From Octopus sinensis (lineage: Eukaryota): DNA of 64,000 nucleotides. A program made the position numbers and the translations under genes. The notes below the pieces were generated by a model. That model did no database searches, had not been told where the DNA came from, and saw only the letters and a program-made list of their open reading frames with translations. Below are positions 9,036 to 64,000 of this stretch, piece after piece. Every line of letters begins with the position of its first letter. Positions within the stretch are counted from its first letter, which is position 1. The DNA is taken from contig NC_043005.1 of NCBI RefSeq assembly GCF_006345805.1, positions 37,820,001 to 37,884,000 of the forward strand, given 5' to 3'.

Positions 9036-9098
9036 ATATTTAGTCCAACCCATGCTAGCATGGAAAGCGGACGCTAAACGATGATGATGATGATGATG
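9036..9098 (+). mobile_element. Extremely 5'-truncated copy of the RTE 3' end
   Basis: GTCCAACCCATGCTAGCATGGAAAGCGGACGCTAAACG(ATG)n matches 45286-45343. Confidence 0.8.
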
Positions 9099-13288: not shown

Positions 13289-13294
13289 TTATAT

Positions 13295-16200
13295 CATCAT
13301 CATCATCATCATCATTTAGCGTCCGTTTTCCATGCTAGCATGGGTTGGACAGTTCTACTGGGGTCTGTGAAGCCAGAAGGCTTCATCAGGCCCAGTCAAA
13401 TCTGGCAGTGTTTCTACGGCTGGATGCCCTTCCTAACGCCAACCACTCCGTGAGTGTAGTGGGTGCTTTTTACGTGCCACCCGCACTGGTGCCAGACAGA
13501 GCTGGCAAACGGCCACGAACGGATGGTGCTTTTTATGTGCCACTGGCACGAGGGCCAGGCGAGGCTGGCAACGGACACGAAACGGGGCGGTGCTGGCAAC
13601 CGTCGCGAAACGGAAAGTTCTCTTACATGCCACCGGCACTGGTAACACATCTGCAATTTCCATTGATCGATTTCCATTGATCGATTTCGATTCTGATCCT
13701 CACTTGCCTCAATGGGTCTTCACAAGCAGAGTTTCGACATGCCACCGGCACTGGTAGCACATCCGCAATTTCCATTGATCGATTTCGATTCTGATCCTCA
13801 CTTGCCTCAACACGTCTTCACAAGTAGAGTTTTGTGTCCCAAGAGGGAAGGTATGCATACGTAGGCTGGCTCCATCCCATGTAGAAGGCCACGGGTTGTG
13901 GACTCACTTGTCCTGCCGGGTCTTCTCGCGCACAGCACACTTCCAGAGGTCTTGGTCTCTAGTCATTTCCTCAGTGAGACCTAAAGTTCGAAGGTCGTGC
14001 TTCACCACCTCGTCCCAGGTTTTCCTGGGTCTGCCTCTTCCACAGGTTCCCTCAACCGCTAGGGTGTGGCACTTTTTCACACAACTATCTTCATCCATTC
14101 TCGCCACATGACCATACCAGCGCAAACGTCTCTCTTGCACACCACAACTGATGCTTCTTAGGTCCAGCTTTCCTCTCATGGTACTTATACTCTGCTGAGT
14201 GTGAGTACCGGCATTACACATCCATCGGAGCATACTGGCTTCATTTCTAGCGAGCTTACACATATCCTCAGCAGTCACGGCCCATGTTTCACTGCCATGT
14301 AGCATGGCTGTTCGTACACACGCATCATACAGTCTGCCTTTCACTCTGTGCGAGAGGCCTTTTGTCACCAGCAGAGGTAAGAGCTCTCTGAACTTTGCCC
14401 AAGCTATTCTTACTCTAGCAGTTACACTTTCAGCACACCCGCCCCCGCTGCTGACTTGGTCACCTAGGTAACGGAAACTATCAACTATTTCTAGTTTTTC
14501 TCCCTGGAAAGTGACGGAAGTTGGTCTCAGAGCATTTTCAGTGTTTATTGTTCCTGAGCATCTGCCACATACAAAAACCATCTTCCTAGTTAGCCTTCCT
14601 TTGACATTGCTGCATCTCTTATGTGTCCATAGCTTACACTTGGTGCATCTTATAGAGTTTCTACCTACACCTTTTCTACAGATCGAGCAGGGCCATCTAC
14701 CTGAAGGTGTTTGTGATTTGTCTACCTTCCTACTGATTACGACTTTGGTTTTAGCTAGATTGACTCTGAGGCCCTTCGATTCTAATCCTTGTTTCCACAC
14801 CTGAAACTTCTCCTCCAGTTCTGATAGTGACTCAGCAATTAGAGCAAGGTCATCAGCATAGAGGAGCTCCCAAGGGCATCCTGTCTTGAGTTCCTCCGTT
14901 ATTGCCTGGAGGACTATGATAAATAGGAGGGGGCTGAGTACTGAGCCTTGGTGGACCCCTACCTCTACCCGGAATTCTTCACTGTACTCATTTCCAACCC
15001 TCACCCTACTAGCGGCGTCCCTATACATGGCCTGCACAGCTCTCAGTAACCATTCATCTATCCCTAGTTTTCTCATTGCCCACCAGATAAGGGATCGGGG
15101 GACCCTGTCAAAGGCTTTCTCCATGTCAACAAAAGCCAGGTACAGGGGCTTATCTTTGGCTAGGTATTTCTCCTGCAGCTGCCTTACCAGGAATATAGCA
15201 TCAGTAGTACTTTTCCCTGGCACAAACCCAAACTGCATCTCATCTAAACTAACTCTCTCTCTAATTAGTTGGGCTATGACCCTCTCCGTAACCTTCATCA
15301 CCTGGTCCAACAGCTTGATACCTCTGTAGTTATTTGTATCTAGGGCATGACCTTTACCTTTGTAGCAGTTGACTATTATACTGCTACACCAGTCATTGGG
15401 TATGACCCCTTTGTGTATCACCTGATTAACTATATGGGTGACTAGGCTATAGCCGACACTACCAGACATTTTGAGCATCTATGCAGTGATTCCTGATGGG
15501 CCTGGGGCTTTCCCTGTCTTCATGCTTCTAATTGCCTTAGCTACCACAGAACTATCAACTCGGATAGCTGGTCCCTCTGTTGGGTCAACATTCGGCAGAC
15601 TCTCTTTATCCCATTCATTTTCTTCATTCAGCAACCTTTCATAGTGGCATCTCCAAACCTCTCTCTTTGCATCCTCATTTAGCGCAAGTGAACCATCTTC
15701 CATGCGAACACACTTCTCTCCTACCACATCACGATTCTCTCTCACACACTGTCTTGCAACACGAAACACCTCCAGTCTTTGGTCCTCACGGCGCAGAACA
15801 TTGGCAAATTTTTTCTTATCTGCTTCCCCTCTGGCTAAATAAACCTGTCTCCTAGCTTCTCTTTTGGCAGTCTGATACAATTCCCTGCTACCCCCATTTT
15901 TCCAGACCTTCCAAGCCTGTCTCTTTTCTCTAATAGCCTTGTCTACAATATTGTTCCACCACCACGTTATTCTAGGTCGAGAGGGGACTTTGCACCAGCC
16001 ACAGATCTAGTCAGTGGCTCTCAGCAGGTTGTCCCTTAGAAACGTCCAGCTGTCTTCTACCCCCTGTGATGCTCTATCCCCTTCTACTTCGTCAGAGGCT
16101 TCAAGTAATATGTCCCTAAATCTCTGTCCATTTGCAGGATCTTTAAGCTTCCAGATCCTTCTTCTCCATATTTGTCGTCTTCTGGTTGTCCTCCTAGTCC

Positions 16201-16868
16201 TGATCCTAAAGTCACTAACTACCAGTCTATGTTGTGGGGTACATTCTTCACCTGGGAAGGTTTTGGCATTTATAAGCAGCCATCTCTCCCTTTGCCTTGT
16301 AAGGATGTAGTCAATTTGGCTGGTATGTTGGCCCGATTGGTAAGTGACTAGGTGGCTGGTAGATTTCCTGAAGTTAGTGTTGCAAATCATAAGATTATTT
16401 CCATCGCAGAACTCCAGCAGCCTGGTTCCCTCCTCGTTGCGGGAGCCATAGCCATAGCCTCCATGTACGCCATGGAAGCCCCCAGCATGTCGTCCAACGT
16501 GACCATTGAAGTCACCAGCCACAAAGATAAGGTCTCTGTCGTTCGTCAATGAGGTAGTCTGCAGTAGAGTGTCATAGAATCGGTCTTTCTGTCCATCGGG
16601 TAGCCCCGACTGAGGAGCATAGGCTGATATAATGGTTGCTAAACTATGATGAAGCACTAATCTAATCTTAAGTATTCTGTCACTTACTCTGATTACCTCA
16701 ATTACTTTATCTACCCATTTCTCAGCGATAAGTATACCCACGCCACCAACCCCGTCAGTGTTCCCTGCCCAGAAAATCTTGTACCTGCGTTCCTTGCCTG
16801 TGAGGAACCTAGCTGATCCTCCTCTCCACCTTATTTCTTGCATGCAACATATTCTTGCATGCAACATA
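13295..16868 (-). mobile_element. RTE-clade LINE copy 1, nearly full length: APE endonuclease, RT with PHD insertion, ~600-bp 3' UTR and (GAT)n tail
   Basis: One reading frame from ~16850 to 13904: CMQEIRW, SAYAP, GDFNGH, SQIDYIL (APE); KAPGPSG, YRGIKLL, QFGF, DMEKAFD, GVHQGSVLSP, YADD, FRYLG (RT); HGSETW, LRWYGH, GRGRPRKTW (RTE C-terminus). Two premature TAGs (16007-16009, 15479-15481), no frameshift. Extreme 5' end is missing. Confidence 0.96.
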
Positions 16869-18298
16869 TATATATATATACACATAAATATATATATACT
16901 CAAATACATACATATGCATACACACACATATATATACATGTATATACACACACAGATATACACATACATATATATATATACACACATACATGCATACATA
17001 CATACATATATGTATATATATTTTCAACCACCTTTAAACACCACTCCTCTTACATTCATATCAACTTATTCACCCAAACTCTGAGCCTTCATCTGTATTC
17101 TCTTCTAATACTCACCGTTTTGTACGTTGAGGGTATAATCTGACACCTTGTTACCAAAATCTCCAACTTCTCTCTATATATTCCCACCCACACTTATATA
17201 TTGTAAGATATCCATGTACTATATTTACAGCAAAACACTTGCCTGTCCATTATAGTTTAACCTCTAAACACTAGCCATAAAGCTACCCCATCTTACATCT
17301 ACAACCTCACTCATTGAGAAGATTTCTTCATTTTCTTTGTCTTGAAAGTTACGAGGTGATCTCACTAGTATTCATGTCATGAAAAAGACACCCAGTACAC
17401 TATGTAAAGTGGTTGACATTTAGAAGGTCATCCAGCTGTAGAAGCTATTGCCAAAGCTAACACTGGTCTTCAACTCAGTCCTCTAGCTCAGGGGATTCTA
17501 TCAAACCATCAAACCCACACTAGTATGGAAGACAGACTATATATCATTATGATGCTATGTCAGTTTAACTACCAATTCTCAAAGAGAGAGCTAGAGCTCC
17601 TGAACTAAGCTCACACTTCCTAGTCTTAGAGAAGAATCAATATTCAATTTTCATACCTTAAAGAGGCTTTATAAAATGCTAATAGATTGAAATTATTACC
17701 TTAATTAACATTTTATTCTCATACATTTCATTTTGGTACCATATGGTGTCTTGTTGCAAGCACCATATGGCGTACTTATTTGGAAAGAATGTTTTAATGT
17801 AAAATATCTTTCTTTCTGTTTTCAAGTTAGAAATGTGCTAGAAAAATTATAACACGGTTATCTTTGTGAAGAGGATTCAGCATCTCATTTTTGCTTTGTG
17901 TTTTGGTTTGTTTTTGTTAGTCTTTTTAAGCTTTACTAAATTTAAAATTTTTCTACTTTCAATTAATACCAGATGATACTGGCATAAAATACGTTTCTGT
18001 CTCTCTCCTCTTCCTTCTCGCCCACTTACATCTATTCGCTCATTCTCATGCATACATATATATATATACACATATGCACATACACATACGAACACACTCA
18101 TAGAGTTGATGAAATACAAAACTTTAGACAAGTGTATAACTTAAAGAAAACAATTTGATAACGATACACAGTCATATACTATAAAGTAAAAGAATGCATG
18201 TACAATCACTCACACATAAATGTGCTTGAAACTTACACTAAGGTAAGTAAATATGCATTCAAATGCTAGCAGAGAAATAGGTACTTAAACATATGTGG

Positions 18299-28295: not shown

Positions 28296-28940
28296 CAGTG
28301 TTTCTCAAACATTTTTTTGCCTATGGATCCCTTTGATTCCTATTTTACACTTCTGGACCCTTGTGCCCATTCCATGTTAAAAACAAATCTTATTCTATTT
28401 TTATAATTAGATCAAGTCAAGTACGTCAACACCAACATCAAAATAAAAATCAAATGGAAATTGTAGTTAAGATACCCGTGCCAGTGACACGTAAAAAGCA
28501 CCGTCTGAACGTGGCAGTTGCCAATACCGCCTGACTGGCGTCCATGTTAGTGACACATAAAAGCACCAACCAATCGTGTCCGTTTGCTAGCCTCCTCTGG
28601 CCCCTGTGACGGTGGCACGTAAAAAACACCCACTACACTCATGGAGTGGTTGGCATTAGGAAGGGCATCGTGCTGTAGAAACGCTGCCAGATCAGACTGG
28701 AGCCTGGTGCAACCTCCTGGCTTCCCAGACCCTGGTCAAACCGTCCAACTCATGCTAGCATGGAAAACAGACGTTAAACGATGATGATGATGATGATATT
28801 ATTATTAAGAATTGTATAAGAAAATTGTTAAAATATTTGGTGTACTGTAGAAGTATAACTAGTTTTTTGGTCATAAATTTTAACAACAAAATTTTATATG
28901 GACCTGAAAGGGTCATATGAACTCCAGTTGAGAACCAGCA
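28296..28940. mobile_element. hAT/Charlie-like MITE interrupted by an RTE 3' fragment
   Basis: Starts CAGTGTTTCTCAAAC and ends GTTGAGAACCAGC, resembling Charlie-type termini; ~270 bp once the 28420-28797 insert is removed. Confidence 0.55.
28420..28797 (+). mobile_element. RTE 3'-UTR-only copy
   Basis: GTGGCACGTAAAAAACACCCACTACACTC...AGGAAGGGCATC...CATGCTAGCATGGAAAACAGACGTTAAACG(ATG)n. Confidence 0.85.
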
Positions 28941-41869: not shown

Positions 41870-42144
41870 GTGTGTGTTTGTTTGTCTGTATATATGTGTG
41901 TGTGTGTGTGTATAGCTGTGTATGTATATACGTGTGTTCATGTATTGTGTTGGTGTTTGTTACCTTCACTGCTTGAAAAACAGTGTTGGGCTGCTTATAT
42001 CTCTGTAACTTAGCAATTTGGCAAATGTGGCCAATAGAATATGTACCTGGCTTTAAAAAAAACAAATAAGGACTGGGGTTGTCCCAACATGACCACAGTC
42101 TAATGACAAATGGATGAAAGATATATATATATATATATATATAT

Positions 42145-45100
42145 CTAGTCACCTACCGTTCTGGCAGACACACCAGCCAGATTGACTACATCCTTGCCAG
42201 AAAAAGGGAAAGAGGGCTGATTATAAATGCCAAAACCTTCCCAGGCGAAGAATGTACTCCCCAACATAGATTAGTAGTTAGCGACTTCAGGATCAGAGCT
42301 AAATGGTCGCCCAGAAGAAGACCAGCTTGGAGGAGAAGGGTCTGGAAGCTTAAAGATCCTGCAAATGCACAGAGATTTAGAGACATACTACTCGAAGCCT
42401 CTGACGAAATAGAAGGGGATATAGCTTCACTTAATGTGGAAGACAACTGGAGATTCCTACGGGACAATCTGCTGACAGCCACTGACCAGATCTGTGGATG
42501 GAGCAAAGTACCATCTCGACCCAGAGTAACATGGTGGTGGAACACGGTGGTTGACGGGGCTATTAGACAAAAGAGACAGGCTTGGAAGGACTGGAAGAAC
42601 GGTGGTAGCAGGGAATTGTATCAGACAGCCAAAAGGGAAGCTAGGAGACAGGTTTATATAGCCAGAGGGGAAGCGGATAAGAAAAAATTTGCCAATGTTC
42701 TGAGCCGTGAGGATGAAAGACTTGAGGTATTTCGTGTTGCAAGACAGTGTGTGAGAGAGAATCGTGATGTGGTAGGAGAGAAGTGTGTTCGCATGGATGA
42801 TGGTTCACTTGCGCTAAATGAGGATGCAAAGAGAGAGGTTTGGAGATGCCACTATGAAAGTTTGCTGAATAAAGAAAATGAATGGGATAAAGAGAGTCTG
42901 CCAAATGTTGACCCAACAGAGGGACCAGCTATCCGAGTTGATAGTTCCGTAGTAGCTAAGGCAGTTAGGAGCATGAAGACAGGGAAAGCCCCAGGCCCAT
43001 CAGGAATTACTGCAGAGATGCTCAAAATATCTGGCAGTGTCGGCTATAACCTAGTCACCCGTATAGTCAACCAGGTGATACACGAAGGAGTCATACCCAA
43101 TGACTGGTGTAGCAGCATACTAGTCAACTGCTACAAAGGTAAAGGTGATGCCCTGGATACAAATAATTACAGAGGTATCAAGCTGTTGGATCAGGTAATG
43201 AAGGGTACGGAGAGGGTCTTAGCCCAACTAATTAGAGAGAGAGTTAGTTTAGATGAGATGCAGTTTGGGTTTGTCCCAGGGAAAAGCACCACTGATGCTA
43301 TATTCCTGGTAAGGCAGCTGCAGGAGAAATACCTAGCCAAGGATAAGCCCCTGTACCTGGCTTTTGTTGACATGGAGAAAGCCTTTGATAGGGTCCCCCG
43401 ATCCCTCATCTGGTGGTCAATGAGGAAACTAGGGATAGATGAATGGCTGGTGAGGGCTGTGCAAGCCATGTACAGAGATGCCGTAAGTAAGGTTAGAGTT
43501 GGCAACATGTACACAGAAGAATTCAAAGTAGAGGTTGGGGTCCACCAGGGTTCAGTACTCAGCCCCCTCCTATTTATCATAGTCCTCCAGGCAATAACGG
43601 AGGAATTCAAGTCCGTTTGCCCCTGGGAGCTCCTCTATGCTGACGACCTCGCTCTAATCGCTGAGTCACTATCAGAACTGGAGGAGAAGTTCCAGGTGTG
43701 GAAGGAGGGTTTAGAATCGAGGGGCCTTAGAGTCAACCTAGCTAAAACCAAAGTACTAATAAGTAGAAAGGTAGAAAACCCACAAATATCATCAGGAAGA
43801 TGGCCCTGTTCGATCTGTAGAAAAGGTGTAGGTAGAAACTCTATAAGATGTACCCAGTGTAAGCTATGGACACATAAGAGGTGCAGCAATGTCAAAGGTA
43901 GGCTAACTGGGAAGATAGTTTTTGTATGTGGCAGGTGCTCTGGAGCACTGACCTCCGAAAATCTGCAGAAAACAACTTCTGTCACTTTCCGGGGGAAAAA
44001 CTAGAAGTAGTTGATAGTTTCCGCTATCTAGGTGACCAAGTCAGTAGTGGGGGTGGGTGCGCTGAAAGTGTAACTGCTAGAATAAGAATAGCCTGGGCAA
44101 AGTTTAGGGAGCTCTTACCTCTGCTGGTGACTAAAGGCCTCTCGCTCAGAGTAAAAGGCAGACTGTATGATGCATGTGTACGAACAGCTATGCTACATGG
44201 CAGTGAAACATGGGCCGTGACTGCTGAGGACATGCGTAAGCTCGTGAGGAACGAAGCCAGTATGCTCCGATGGATGTGTAATGTCAGTGTACTTACTCGA
44301 CAGAGCGTTAGTACCTTGAGAGAAATGTTGTACCTAAGAAGCATCAGTTGTTGTGTGCAAGAGAGACGATTGCGCTGGTATGGTCATGTGGCGAGAATGG
44401 ATGAAGAGAGGTGTGTGAGAAAGTGCCAATCCCTAGCAGTTGAGGGAACCCGTGGAAGAGGTAGACCCAGGAAAACCTGGGACGAGGTGGTGAAGCACGA
44501 CCTTCGGACGTTAGGTCTCACCATGGAAATGACTAGAGACCGAGACCTATGGAAGTATGCTGTGCGTGAGAAGACCCGGCAAGACTAGTGAAGCCATAAT
44601 CCGTGGCCCCTACCTGGGACGTAGTCAGTCCACCTGTGCATACCTTCCTTCTTGTGACACTTGTGAAGACCTGTTGAGGCAAGTGAGAATCGAATCGAAT
44701 CGTATCAAATCAAATCGAACCAAATCAAAATAGATGAACATCAATGGAATTTGTATCCTTGTGGTACCAGTGCCGGTGGCACATAAAAAACCATCCGAAC
44801 GTGACCGTAGCCAGTACCGCAATGACTGGCCTCCGTGCTGAGGGCACGTAACAAACACCATCCGAGCGTGGCCGTCCACCAGCCTCGTCTAGCACCTGTG
44901 TCGGTGACACATAAGAAAACACCATCCGAGCGTGGCCGTCTGCCAGCCTCGTCTGGCACCTGTGTCGGTGGCACATAAAAAACACCATCCGAGCGTGGCC
45001 GTCTGCCAGCCTCGTCTGGCACCTGTGTCGGTGGCACATAAAAAAAAACACCATCCGAGCGTGGCCGTCTGCCAGCCTCGTCTGGCACCTGTGTCGGTGG

Positions 45101-45343
45101 CACATAAAAAACACCATCCGAGGTGGCCGTCTGCCAGCCTCGTCTGGCACCTGTGTCGGTGGCACATAAAATCACCCACTACACTCTCGGAGTGGTTGGC
45201 GTTAGGAAGGGCATCCAGCTGTAGAACACTGCCACATCTGACTGGCCTGGTGCAGCCTTCGGGCTTCCCAGACCCCAGTTGAACCGTCCAACCCATGCTA
45301 GCATGGAAAGCGGACGTTAAACGATGATGATGATGATGATGAT
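42145..45343 (+). mobile_element. RTE-clade LINE copy 2, 5'-truncated within APE: RT with PHD insertion, tandem-array 3' UTR, (GAT)n tail
   Basis: Open frame from 42145 (LVTYRSGRHTSQIDYIL) to a 1-bp deletion at ~43990, continuing in a second frame to TAG at 44586-44588. About 93% identical to copy 1 in one ~235-nt RT segment compared by eye. Inserted in (TA)n. Confidence 0.96.
44854..45172 (+). repeat. Five tandem ~63-bp GC-rich units within the RTE 3' UTR
   Basis: Unit AACACCATCCGAGCGTGGCCGTCTGCCAGCCTCGTCTGGCACCTGTGTCGGTGGCACATAAAA; units differ mainly in A-run length; no spacers. Confidence 0.92.
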
Positions 45344-63834: not shown

Positions 63835-64000
63835 AGCACCGCCTCGACTGGCTTCCGTGCCGGTGGCACATAAAACACACCAATCCGACCGTGGCCGTTG
63901 CCAGCCTCGCCTGGCACCTGTGCAGGTGGCACGTAAAAAGCACCCACTACACTCACAGAGTGGTTGGCGTTAGGAAGGGCATCCAGATGTAGAAACATTG
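63835..64000 (+). mobile_element. RTE 3'-UTR-only copy, running off the window end
   Basis: GGTGGCACATAAAACACACC...GGTGGCACGTAAAAAGCACCCACTACACTC...AGGAAGGGCATCCAG, following (TA)n. Confidence 0.85.

What the first reader, a model, noticed from the sequence alone, without database searches (positions are those of the whole stretch)
43807..43938. PHD-type (C4HC3) zinc finger inserted inside the reverse transcriptase domain of an RTE LINE (copy 2)
Seen: between the GLRVNLAKTK motif and the FRYLG motif, about 90 codons intervene, versus roughly 30 in the RTEX fragment of this window. They include W-P-C-S-I-C-x10-C-T-Q-C-K-L-W-T-H-K-R-C-x14-C-G-R-C, an exact C-x2-C-x10-C-x2-C-x4-H-x2-C-x14-C-x2-C PHD spacing. 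Established: PHD fingers occur in ORF1p of some CR1/L2 elements and often read histone H3 tails; RTE elements typically have one APE-RT ORF and no ORF1p. Inference: this family has grafted a reader or nucleic-acid-binding module into the polymerase itself, possibly for chromatin-guided target choice or RNA/primer handling. The finger keeps the Trp two residues before His, as in H3K4me3 readers, but is very basic and lacks the usual acidic H3-contacting residues, so nucleic-acid binding is equally plausible. I cannot tell whether this architecture is already catalogued in repeat databases.
Basis: partly seen in the sequence, partly recalled or inferred. Interest (0 to 1): 0.8.

Follow-up and report, generated by a model that had tools for sequence, protein, structure and literature searches.

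The report
PHD zinc finger inside LINE polymerase
Two decayed copies of an RTE-type jumping gene in this window carry a real, strongly conserved PHD zinc finger spliced into the middle of their reverse transcriptase, a layout shared by over a thousand relatives in cnidarians, molluscs and amphioxus. I found no paper describing it, and it may help the element dock onto target DNA or chromatin.

Summary
The motif C-x2-C-x10-C-x2-C-x4-H-x2-C-x14-C-x2-C lies exactly at 43807-43938 (+). A second copy lies at 14558-14689 (-). None occurred in 200 random windows.

It is a genuine PHD finger. The isolated segment passes Pfam's cut-off. The closest solved sequences are Pygopus, PHF23, PHF13, TAF3 and BPTF. 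The top 50 structural matches to the predicted fold are nearly all PHD fingers.

It is a roughly 67-residue insert between reverse transcriptase motifs 6 (…NLAKTK) and 7 (FRYLG). That gap is 90 residues here, 23 in BovB-type relatives and about 29 in an RTEX-like fragment in the window.

All 120 closest homologues (47-73% identical; Hydractinia, Mercenaria, Branchiostoma) carry the insert. The eight zinc ligands are kept in 119-120 of 120. A PHD-only profile finds 1047 representative proteins at E<=1e-10. Between the two window copies dN/dS is 0.12 in the finger and 0.10 in the RT core.

Function is inferred only. The insert occupies the position named motif 6a in R2 elements, a loop that wedges into target DNA. 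The finger is basic (family mean +6) yet keeps two aromatic positions that I assign, from memory, to Pygopus's methyl-lysine pocket. I favour target DNA or chromatin docking.

Nine literature searches found no description. I rate it a new variant of a known kind.

The parts
42145..45343 (+). Copy 2 of the RTE-type LINE. It is 5'-truncated (the APE domain is missing) and abuts a (TA)n microsatellite.
   Evidence: Self-comparison of the window and translation. It is 88.8% identical in DNA to copy 1.
42436..44004 (+). Longest open frame of copy 2: RT fingers and palm, followed by the PHD finger.
   Evidence: ORF list. Pfam RVT_1 E=7e-31 over residues 238-442, and PHD over 458-501.
43723..43752 (+). 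RT motif 6 (GLRVNLAKTK).
   Evidence: Translation. G236, L237 and K243 are invariant in 120 homologues.
43765..43977 (+). The whole insert: linker 1, PHD finger and linker 2 (residues 250-320 in copy-1 ORF numbering).
   Evidence: Comparison with BovB-type and RTEX-like spacing. In the model, pLDDT is 91-95 for the finger and about 72 for the linkers.
43807..43938 (+). PHD finger, from the first to the last zinc ligand (C4HC3).
43990..43991 (+). Site of a 1-nt deletion (frameshift) in copy 2 relative to copy 1.
   Evidence: Pairwise DNA alignment.
44018..44032 (+). RT motif 7 (FRYLG), read in the shifted frame.
   Evidence: Sequence and translation. F335, L338 and G339 are invariant in homologues.
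44033..44588 (+). Thumb and C-terminal region, through the stop codon.
   Evidence: ORF 43926-44588. The model aligns to R2 and LINE-1 ORF2p over about 490-550 columns.
44843..45171 (+). 63-bp tandem repeat (5.2 copies) in the 3' untranslated region.
   Evidence: Tandem Repeats Finder.
45323..45343 (+). (GAT)7 microsatellite at the 3' end of the element.
   Evidence: Sequence. The repeat alignments end here.
13293..16870 (-). Copy 1 of the same family. It is nearly full length, with APE, RT, PHD and thumb in one frame and two in-frame stop codons.
14558..14689 (-). PHD finger of copy 1, with all eight ligands intact and continuous in frame with motif 7.
16289..16852 (-). APE endonuclease domain of copy 1.
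   Evidence: Pfam Exo_endo_phos_2 at 30.8 bits (cut-off 27.4) and Exo_endo_phos at 24.5 bits (cut-off 24.5).

Best explanation
Shown: a genuine, selectively maintained PHD-type (C4HC3, cross-brace) zinc finger of about 47 residues, flanked by two linkers of about 12 residues, replaces the short loop between RT motifs 6 and 7. It does so in a large clade of RTE-type LINEs spanning several animal phyla. The two window copies are decayed members of that clade.

Inferred: the finger is the element's target-site docking module. During target-primed reverse transcription it would sit where R2's motif 6a loop wedges into upstream target DNA. It would hold the target DNA, or nucleosomal DNA, through its conserved basic surface (K287, K/R288, R306, K/R295, K/R261). 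The retained aromatic pair (position 262 and W284) may add a contact to a histone tail or to an unpaired base.

My confidence that it is a functional PHD insert is about 0.95. My confidence in DNA or chromatin docking as its role is about 0.45, and that is the figure entered in the confidence field.
For: Identity as a PHD finger:
- Pfam PHD scores 27.2 bits (cut-off 24) on the isolated segment and covers the full profile. Relatives score 24.3-27.8 bits.
- The family profile hits Pygopus PHD at 3.4e-7, then PHF23, PHF13, Alfin-like, KDM5B, TAF3, PHF2 and BPTF.
- The top 50 Foldseek matches to the isolated model are nearly all PHD fingers (probability mostly 0.9-1.0, lowest 0.69; rmsd mostly 2-4 A).

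Selection:
- All 120 closest homologues carry the insert, and the ligands are kept in 119-120 of 120 at about 50% overall identity.
- The finger (mean top-residue frequency 0.67) is better conserved than the thumb (0.56) or the linkers (0.45 and 0.48).
- Between the two window copies dN/dS is 0.12 for the finger, 0.10 for the RT core and 0.18 overall.
- A PHD-only profile finds 1047 representative proteins at E<=1e-10.

Insert status: 90 residues here against 23 in BovB-type elements and about 29 in the RTEX-like fragment.

Docking role:
- The finger's net charge averages +6.2 across the family, with near-invariant basic positions.
- R2 cryo-EM papers report that the RT motif 6a loop wedges into, or contacts, upstream target DNA (PMC12180492, PMC11204384, PMC12247875).
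- No other nucleic-acid-binding accessory domain was detected in the ORF.
Against: - No ligand was tested, so the function is pure inference.
- I could not obtain model coordinates, so the finger's orientation relative to the DNA path was not measured.
- That motif 6a lies between motifs 6 and 7 rests on the nomenclature and my recollection. It was not checked residue by residue here.
- PHD fingers are overwhelmingly histone-tail readers, and direct DNA binding by a PHD is uncommon.
- The best sequence and fold matches are H3K4me2/3 readers, and two aromatic positions that I assign from memory to that pocket are conserved, which favours the histone-reader rival.
- The window copies score below Pfam's cut-off when scanned as whole proteins (21.0 and 21.4 bits against 24).
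Confidence: 0.45

Rival explanations
1. The finger is a histone H3 lysine-4 methyl reader. It tethers the polymerase to nucleosomes carrying that mark, so integration is steered by chromatin state. Comparable cases are the RAG2 PHD finger and the chromodomain of chromovirus integrases.
For: - The closest solved relatives by sequence profile, and most of the best fold matches, are H3K4me2/3 readers: Pygopus, PHF23, PHF13, TAF3, BPTF, MLL5 and ING.
- W284, two residues before the His, is kept in 117 of 120. An aromatic residue two positions before the first Cys is kept in 112 of 120.
- In the alignment to Pygopus these fall on the Tyr of 'YPCG' and the Trp of 'WFH'. From my recollection of the Pygopus structures, not checked here, those two residues form its methyl-lysine pocket.
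- The family consensus has acidic residues in the loop before the seventh ligand (D299, D301).
Against: - The finger carries net +6 on average and +13 in the window copy, while the H3 tail is itself strongly basic.
- The loop that carries the pocket Asp in Pygopus is two residues shorter here and has no acidic residue.
- The window copies have lost the acidic loop residues.
- No peptide binding was tested.
Confidence: 0.3
2. The finger handles the element's own RNA template or the primer, acting like a nucleocapsid zinc knuckle. It would make up for the missing ORF1 protein and the missing C-terminal CCHC domain in this minimal LINE.
For: - It combines a basic surface with conserved exposed aromatics, as in retroviral nucleocapsid knuckles (the nucleocapsid comparison is from general knowledge).
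- It lies immediately before motif 7, the primer grip.
- No other RNA-binding domain was found in the ORF.
Against: - In R2 the equivalent loop contacts target DNA, not the template RNA.
- The PHD fold is not a known RNA chaperone.
- Whether full-length members have an ORF1 could not be settled, because every copy examined was 5'-truncated.
Confidence: 0.15
3. The finger is a protein-protein or purely structural module. It might recruit a host factor, mediate dimerisation, or brace the palm against the thumb.
For: - Pygopus PHD, the closest solved relative, also binds BCL9 on a second face (entries 4up0 and 2xb1).
- The finger is modelled more confidently within the full-length protein (pLDDT 91-95) than alone (78.5). 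The two alignments differ in depth (120 against 46 sequences), so this is weak evidence.
Against: - The low-confidence linkers suggest a tethered rather than a packed domain.
- The conserved basic and aromatic surface points to a small charged or aromatic-stacking ligand rather than a protein face.
- No partner is known.
Confidence: 0.08
4. The cysteine pattern is a chance match or a neutral passenger insert with no function.
For: The window copies fall slightly below Pfam's cut-off when scanned as whole proteins.
Against: - There were no matches in 200 random windows.
- The ligands are invariant across sequences that are about 50% identical overall.
- dN/dS is 0.12 in the finger.
- A PHD-only profile finds 1047 representatives at E<=1e-10.
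Confidence: 0.02

Closest known systems
PHD fingers in ORF1 proteins (or at the N-terminus of ORF2) of CR1 and L2 LINEs (Kapitonov and Jurka 2003; Metcalfe and Casane 2014, PMC4120745)
   Same: A PHD finger carried by a non-LTR retrotransposon. It is presumed to engage chromatin, and no functional study exists.
   Different: Those fingers sit in a separate protein or at a terminus, and in the Jockey superfamily. Here the finger is spliced into the polymerase palm between motifs 6 and 7 of an RTE-type element. Metcalfe and Casane describe ORF2 structure as highly constrained.
RT motif 6a loop of R2 retrotransposons (cryo-EM of Bombyx, zebra finch and turtle R2; PMC12180492, PMC11204384)
   Same: By name, it is the same position in the RT, just after motif 6. 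In R2 this loop wedges into upstream target DNA during target-primed reverse transcription.
   Different: R2's motif 6a is a short loop, whereas here it is a folded zinc-binding domain. R2 uses a restriction-like endonuclease and N-terminal zinc fingers and Myb for targeting. This element has an APE endonuclease and no such domains. The positional equivalence was not verified by superposition.
H3K4me2/3-reading PHD fingers: Pygopus, PHF13, PHF23, TAF3, BPTF
   Same: The same fold and ligand spacing class. They share the 'YPCG[IV]C' and 'W-x-H' signatures (with Pygopus in particular), and they are the best profile and fold matches.
   Different: The LINE finger is strongly basic, has a shorter first loop without the pocket Asp, and is embedded in an enzyme. 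Histone binding is untested.
BovB/RTE-type LINEs
   Same: An APE+RT single-frame layout, a total length of about 3.6 kb, a simple-repeat 3' end, and C-terminal RLRW.GH and GRPRK.W motifs.
   Different: BovB-type elements have only 23 residues, with no Cys, between motifs 6 and 7. The C-terminal regions are only about 29% identical.
Chromatin-reader modules in other mobile-element enzymes: the RAG2 PHD finger and the chromodomain of chromovirus integrases (from general knowledge)
   Same: A reader fold fused to a DNA-insertion enzyme, which could couple insertion to chromatin state.
   Different: Those are terminal fusions to recombinases or integrases. This one is an internal insertion in a reverse transcriptase. 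This is a functional analogy only and was not tested.

Membership tests
PHD finger (Pfam PF00628) | Eight zinc ligands in the order C4-H-C3, with PHD-like spacing | tested here: met
   The spacing is C-x2-C-x10-C-x2-C-x4-H-x2-C-x14-C-x2-C in both copies. The same 10-4-14 spacing occurs in 96 of 120 homologues.
PHD finger (Pfam PF00628) | Profile score above Pfam's curated cut-off (24 bits) | tested here: met
   The isolated 61-residue segment scores 27.2 bits over profile positions 1-47 of 47. Four of five relatives scanned score 24.3-27.8 and the fifth, P0108, 21.8. Caveat: the window copies scanned as whole proteins score 21.0 and 21.4, below the cut-off.
PHD finger (Pfam PF00628) | Cross-brace fold similar to solved PHD fingers | tested here: met
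   The isolated AlphaFold model has pLDDT 78.5. The top 50 Foldseek PDB matches are nearly all PHD fingers, with probability mostly 0.9-1.0 (lowest 0.69) and target-normalised TM 0.5-0.7 for single-domain entries.
PHD finger (Pfam PF00628) | Binds two zinc ions | not testable with these tools
   This needs metal analysis of the purified domain.
H3K4me2/3-reader subclass of PHD fingers | Aromatic pocket residues: Trp two residues before the His, plus an N-terminal aromatic | tested here: met
   W284 is kept in 117 of 120 and an aromatic at position 262 in 112 of 120. These align with the Tyr and Trp of Pygopus 'YPCG' and 'WFH'. Their role in the Pygopus pocket is from my recollection, not checked here.
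H3K4me2/3-reader subclass of PHD fingers | Acidic or neutral surface that accepts the basic H3 tail (contacts to A1 and R2) | tested here: not met
   Net charge is +6.2 on average and +13 in the window copy. There is no acidic residue in the first loop.
H3K4me2/3-reader subclass of PHD fingers | Measured binding to a methylated H3 peptide | not testable with these tools
   This needs peptide arrays or calorimetry.
RTE-superfamily LINE | N-terminal APE endonuclease and RT in a single reading frame | tested here: met
   Copy 1 has APE (Pfam 30.8 bits) followed by RVT_1 (E=1e-32) in one frame, interrupted only by two stop codons.
RTE-superfamily LINE | No ORF1 | tested here: inconclusive
   Both copies and the homologues examined are 5'-truncated, so the 5' end was never seen.
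RTE-superfamily LINE | 3' end made of a short simple repeat rather than poly(A) | tested here: met
   (GAT)7 lies at 45323-45343. The 3' ends of the solo tail copies elsewhere in the window align to the same point at the element's 3' end.
RTE-superfamily LINE | RT groups with RTE reference elements in a phylogeny | not testable with these tools
   No Repbase or Dfam references were available. The only indirect evidence is that the C-terminus is more similar to a BovB-like fragment (29% identity, E=2.6e-6) than to the RTEX-like fragment (25%, E=0.008).

The most novel reading that the evidence does not exclude
The finger is a working methyl-lysine (H3K4me-type) reader built into the polymerase at the loop that faces target DNA. 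Initiation of reverse transcription at the nick would then be gated by the chromatin state of the target nucleosome. That would make this the first LINE clade with an intrinsic epigenetic targeting device inside its catalytic domain, and could help explain the clade's spread across marine animal phyla.
Probability: 0.3. Interest if true: 0.8.

Novelty: new variant of a known kind. Interest (0 to 1): 0.55.

Why it matters
LINE reverse transcriptases are regarded as architecturally rigid, and PHD fingers in LINEs have so far been reported only in ORF1 proteins or at termini. Here a folded reader-type domain sits inside the palm of the RT, at the loop that touches target DNA in R2. It is under purifying selection about as strong as on the catalytic core, in over a thousand representative sequences from several animal phyla.

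This offers a tractable system for asking how APE-type LINEs, which have little DNA sequence specificity, choose targets in chromatin. It also shows that the motif 6-7 loop tolerates a roughly 67-residue domain, which is useful to know when engineering retrotransposon-based gene-insertion tools.

Tried and rejected
- I looked up the copy-1 ORF in public assemblies to identify the source organism. It was not on record, so the organism stays unidentified. A cephalopod is a guess only.
- I used the BovB-like C-terminal fragment as a protein query to get full-length PHD-less relatives. It returned only short C-terminal fragments. I recovered the motif 6-7 region by fetching two contigs and translating upstream.
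- I searched the supplements of the octopus RTE-2_OV paper for this finger's peptide strings, to see whether its reported 'C2H2' finger is the same module. No sequence is held there.
- I wanted to measure where the finger sits relative to palm, thumb and the DNA path. Model coordinates are not exposed, so only pLDDT and secondary structure were available.
- I tested whether the solo 3' tails are tRNA-derived SINEs. No tRNA-like sequence was found in the window, and the tails fit 5'-truncated LINE copies equally well.
- I considered C1, RING and ZZ fingers as alternatives. All scored below their cut-offs and covered only part of their profiles.
- I first guessed, from amino-acid against DNA identity, that the two copies had diverged neutrally. 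The codon-based count showed purifying selection instead.
Full report
**1. What is in the sequence**

The window is AT-rich (35% G+C) and full of microsatellites. At 42145-45343 (+) lies a 5'-truncated LINE, copy 2. Its longest frame (42436-44004) reads through an RT domain and then ...GLRVNLAKTKVLISRKVENPQISSGRWPCSICRKGVGRNSIRCTQCKLWTHKRCSNVKGRLTGKIVFVCGRCSG....

The pattern C-x2-C-x10-C-x2-C-x4-H-x2-C-x14-C-x2-C maps exactly to 43807-43938. A 1-nt deletion between 43990 and 43991 shifts the frame. After it the protein continues ...EKLEVVDSFRYLGDQV... to a stop at 44586-44588.

A second, longer copy lies at about 16870-13293 (-). It is 88.8% identical in DNA. It has an APE endonuclease domain (Pfam Exo_endo_phos_2, 30.8 bits), then the RT, the same finger at 14558-14689 and motif 7. 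All are in one frame, broken only by two stop codons.

A relaxed C4HC3 pattern finds these two sites and nothing else in six frames. It finds nothing in 200 random windows with the same dinucleotide statistics.

**2. It is a PHD finger**

- The isolated 61-residue segment scores 27.2 bits against Pfam PHD (cut-off 24) and covers the whole profile. As whole proteins the two window copies score 21.0 and 21.4, just under the cut-off. Four of five relatives scanned score 24.3-27.8 and the fifth 21.8.
- A single-sequence search of solved structures hits the PHF13 PHD finger.
- A profile of 46 family fingers hits Pygopus PHD at 3.4e-7. PHF23, PHF13, Alfin-like 3, KDM5B, TAF3, PHF2 and BPTF follow.
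- An AlphaFold model of the finger alone has pLDDT 78.5. Its top 50 Foldseek matches in the PDB are nearly all PHD fingers, including MLL5, BPTF, TAF3, Pygo2, ING and PHF13.
- C1, RING and ZZ profiles matched only partially and below their cut-offs.

**3. It is an insert inside the RT**

The Pfam RVT_1 match stops at profile position 193-194 of 205, immediately before the finger. Motif 7 (FRYLG) and about 190 further residues follow.

The full 524-residue model of the copy-1 frame is confident (pLDDT 90.3, pTM 0.86). The finger is at 91-95 and the two flanking linkers at about 72. The model matches R2 and LINE-1 ORF2p structures over about 490-550 alignment columns, with E-values of 6e-20 to 3e-16.

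There are 90 residues between the KT of motif 6 and the F of motif 7. Two BovB-type elements recovered from public contigs have 23 residues and no cysteine there...KTKFMASGPITPWKIKSDTVETVSDFIFLG and ...KTKVMSTEEIEDFELDGENVEIVRDFVFLG. An RTEX-like fragment in this window (about 39390-38600, -) has about 29 codons. The insert is therefore about 67 residues, placed at the tip of the hairpin between the two motifs.

**4. It is conserved and widespread**

- A search with the copy-1 frame returned at least 2600 proteins at E<=1e-5.
- The 120 best hits are 47-73% identical to the query. Named sources are Hydractinia symbiolongicarpus, Mercenaria mercenaria, Branchiostoma belcheri and B. floridae. Most already carry machine-made Pfam RVT_1 + PHD labels.
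- All 120 have the insert. The two that fail the pattern have a single ligand mutated.
- Ligands are kept in 119-120 of 120. P263 is kept in all 120, W284 in 117, and G270, V271, G272, N274, S275, I276 and L296 in more than 90%.
- The mean frequency of the commonest residue is 0.67 for the finger (0.61 without the ligands). It is 0.77 for the RT core, 0.56 for the thumb, and 0.45 and 0.48 for the two linkers.
- A PHD-only profile searched against 1.84 billion representative proteins finds 4387 at E<=0.001 and 1047 at E<=1e-10. Most are short frames from LINE copies, and many show motif 6 or motif 7 beside the finger.
- One relative, P0117, has an uninterrupted 808-residue frame and represents a cluster of 2029 near-identical sequences. 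Its 808 residues do not include a detectable APE domain, so it is probably 5'-truncated or its gene call starts at an internal Met. I therefore do not count it as evidence of current activity.
- Between the two window copies dS is 0.33 and dN 0.06, so dN/dS is 0.18 overall. It is 0.12 in the finger (6 synonymous and 3 non-synonymous changes), 0.10 in the RT core and 0.21 in the C-terminal region. The two copies thus descend from lineages that were still under selection, with the finger as constrained as the catalytic core. The count for the finger is small.

**5. How it probably works (inference)**

Three observations bear on function.

First, position. R2 cryo-EM papers report that the RT 'motif 6a' loop wedges into, or contacts, upstream target DNA between the zinc finger and Myb contacts (PMC12180492, PMC11204384, PMC12247875). 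By its name, motif 6a is the segment after motif 6, which is where this finger sits. I could not verify the equivalence by superposition, because model coordinates are not exposed.

Second, charge. The finger carries net +6.2 on average (range +2 to +11), and +13 in the window copy. K287, K/R288, R306, K/R295 and K/R261 are near-invariant basic positions.

Third, a pocket signature. W284 and the aromatic at position 262 align with the Trp of 'WFH' and the Tyr of 'YPCG' in Pygopus. From my own recollection of the Pygopus structures, not checked here, these form its methyl-lysine pocket. The loop that carries the pocket Asp in Pygopus is two residues shorter here and has no acidic residue.

I therefore favour a target-site docking role, with the basic surface on target or nucleosomal DNA (about 0.45). 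A true H3K4-methyl reader comes second (about 0.30). Template or primer handling in place of a missing ORF1 protein or CCHC knuckle is third (about 0.15). A structural or protein-binding role follows (about 0.08), and no function is about 0.02. None of these was tested.

**6. Comparison with what is known**

PHD fingers in LINEs are described for ORF1 proteins, or the N-terminus of ORF2, in CR1 and L2 elements. That review notes that no functional study exists and calls ORF2 structure highly constrained (PMC4120745).

The octopus RTE-2_OV paper reports EN, RT and a zinc finger it calls C2H2, 'relatively rare in RTE elements' (PMC9115989). Pfam's RT model ends just before this finger, so a domain diagram would draw it after the RT. 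That reported finger might be the same module, but the sequence is not held in the supplements.

Recent mollusc LINE surveys do not mention any zinc finger in RTE elements (PMC11203168, PMC10294476).

Nine full-text searches found no description of a PHD finger inside an RT. Repbase and Dfam could not be consulted. The architecture is visible in machine annotations.

**7. Verdict**

It is a new variant of a known kind: a LINE with a PHD finger, in a new position and a new clade. It is common in nature and seemingly unremarked in the literature I could search.

I rate interest at 0.55. The structure is real and testable, but function is open, and the architecture is already implicit in public annotation.

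No step needed referral.

Noticed in passing
window 28474-28797 (+), 54878-54557 (-), 39685-39407 (-), 63841-63994 (+, cut by the window end), 9043-9097 (+): Solo copies of the last 55 to about 530 bp of this LINE's 3' untranslated region, 80-93% identical. They are either extreme 5'-truncations or a SINE-like parasite of the element. No tRNA-like head was found.
   Followed up: partly
window 44843-45171 (+): The 3' untranslated region of copy 2 holds 5.2 copies of a 63-bp tandem repeat, and copy 1 has fewer. The element ends in (GAT)7 at 45323-45343.
   Followed up: partly
window about 39390-38600 (-): A decayed RTEX-like LINE fragment (FADDIALIS ... GLYLNEAKTEY ... DYKYLG ...) with several frameshifts. 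It lies directly beside one of the solo tails.
   Followed up: partly
window 3332-2961 (-): A BovB-like LINE C-terminal fragment (…AFELWCWRRLLRIPW…GRGRPRTRWLD…). It has more than 5900 database relatives, including true ruminant-type BovB.
   Followed up: partly
protein P0031: A protein 75% identical to this animal LINE RT-PHD is deposited as 'MAG: hypothetical protein [Herbaspirillum sp.]'. This is almost certainly eukaryotic contamination of a bacterial metagenome bin.
   Followed up: no
proteins P0121 and P0122: Some family copies carry two tandem PHD modules. In P0121 the two repeats are nearly identical, so the insert itself has been duplicated at least once.
   Followed up: no
PMC9115989: The brain-expressed octopus element RTE-2_OV is reported with a 'C2H2' zinc finger next to its RT.
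   Followed up: partly
window 42121-42146 and 16870-17000: Both LINE copies abut microsatellites at their 5' ends: (TA)n for copy 2 and a TA/CA-rich tract for copy 1. The listed ORF 16007-16999 (-) begins inside that tract.
   Followed up: no
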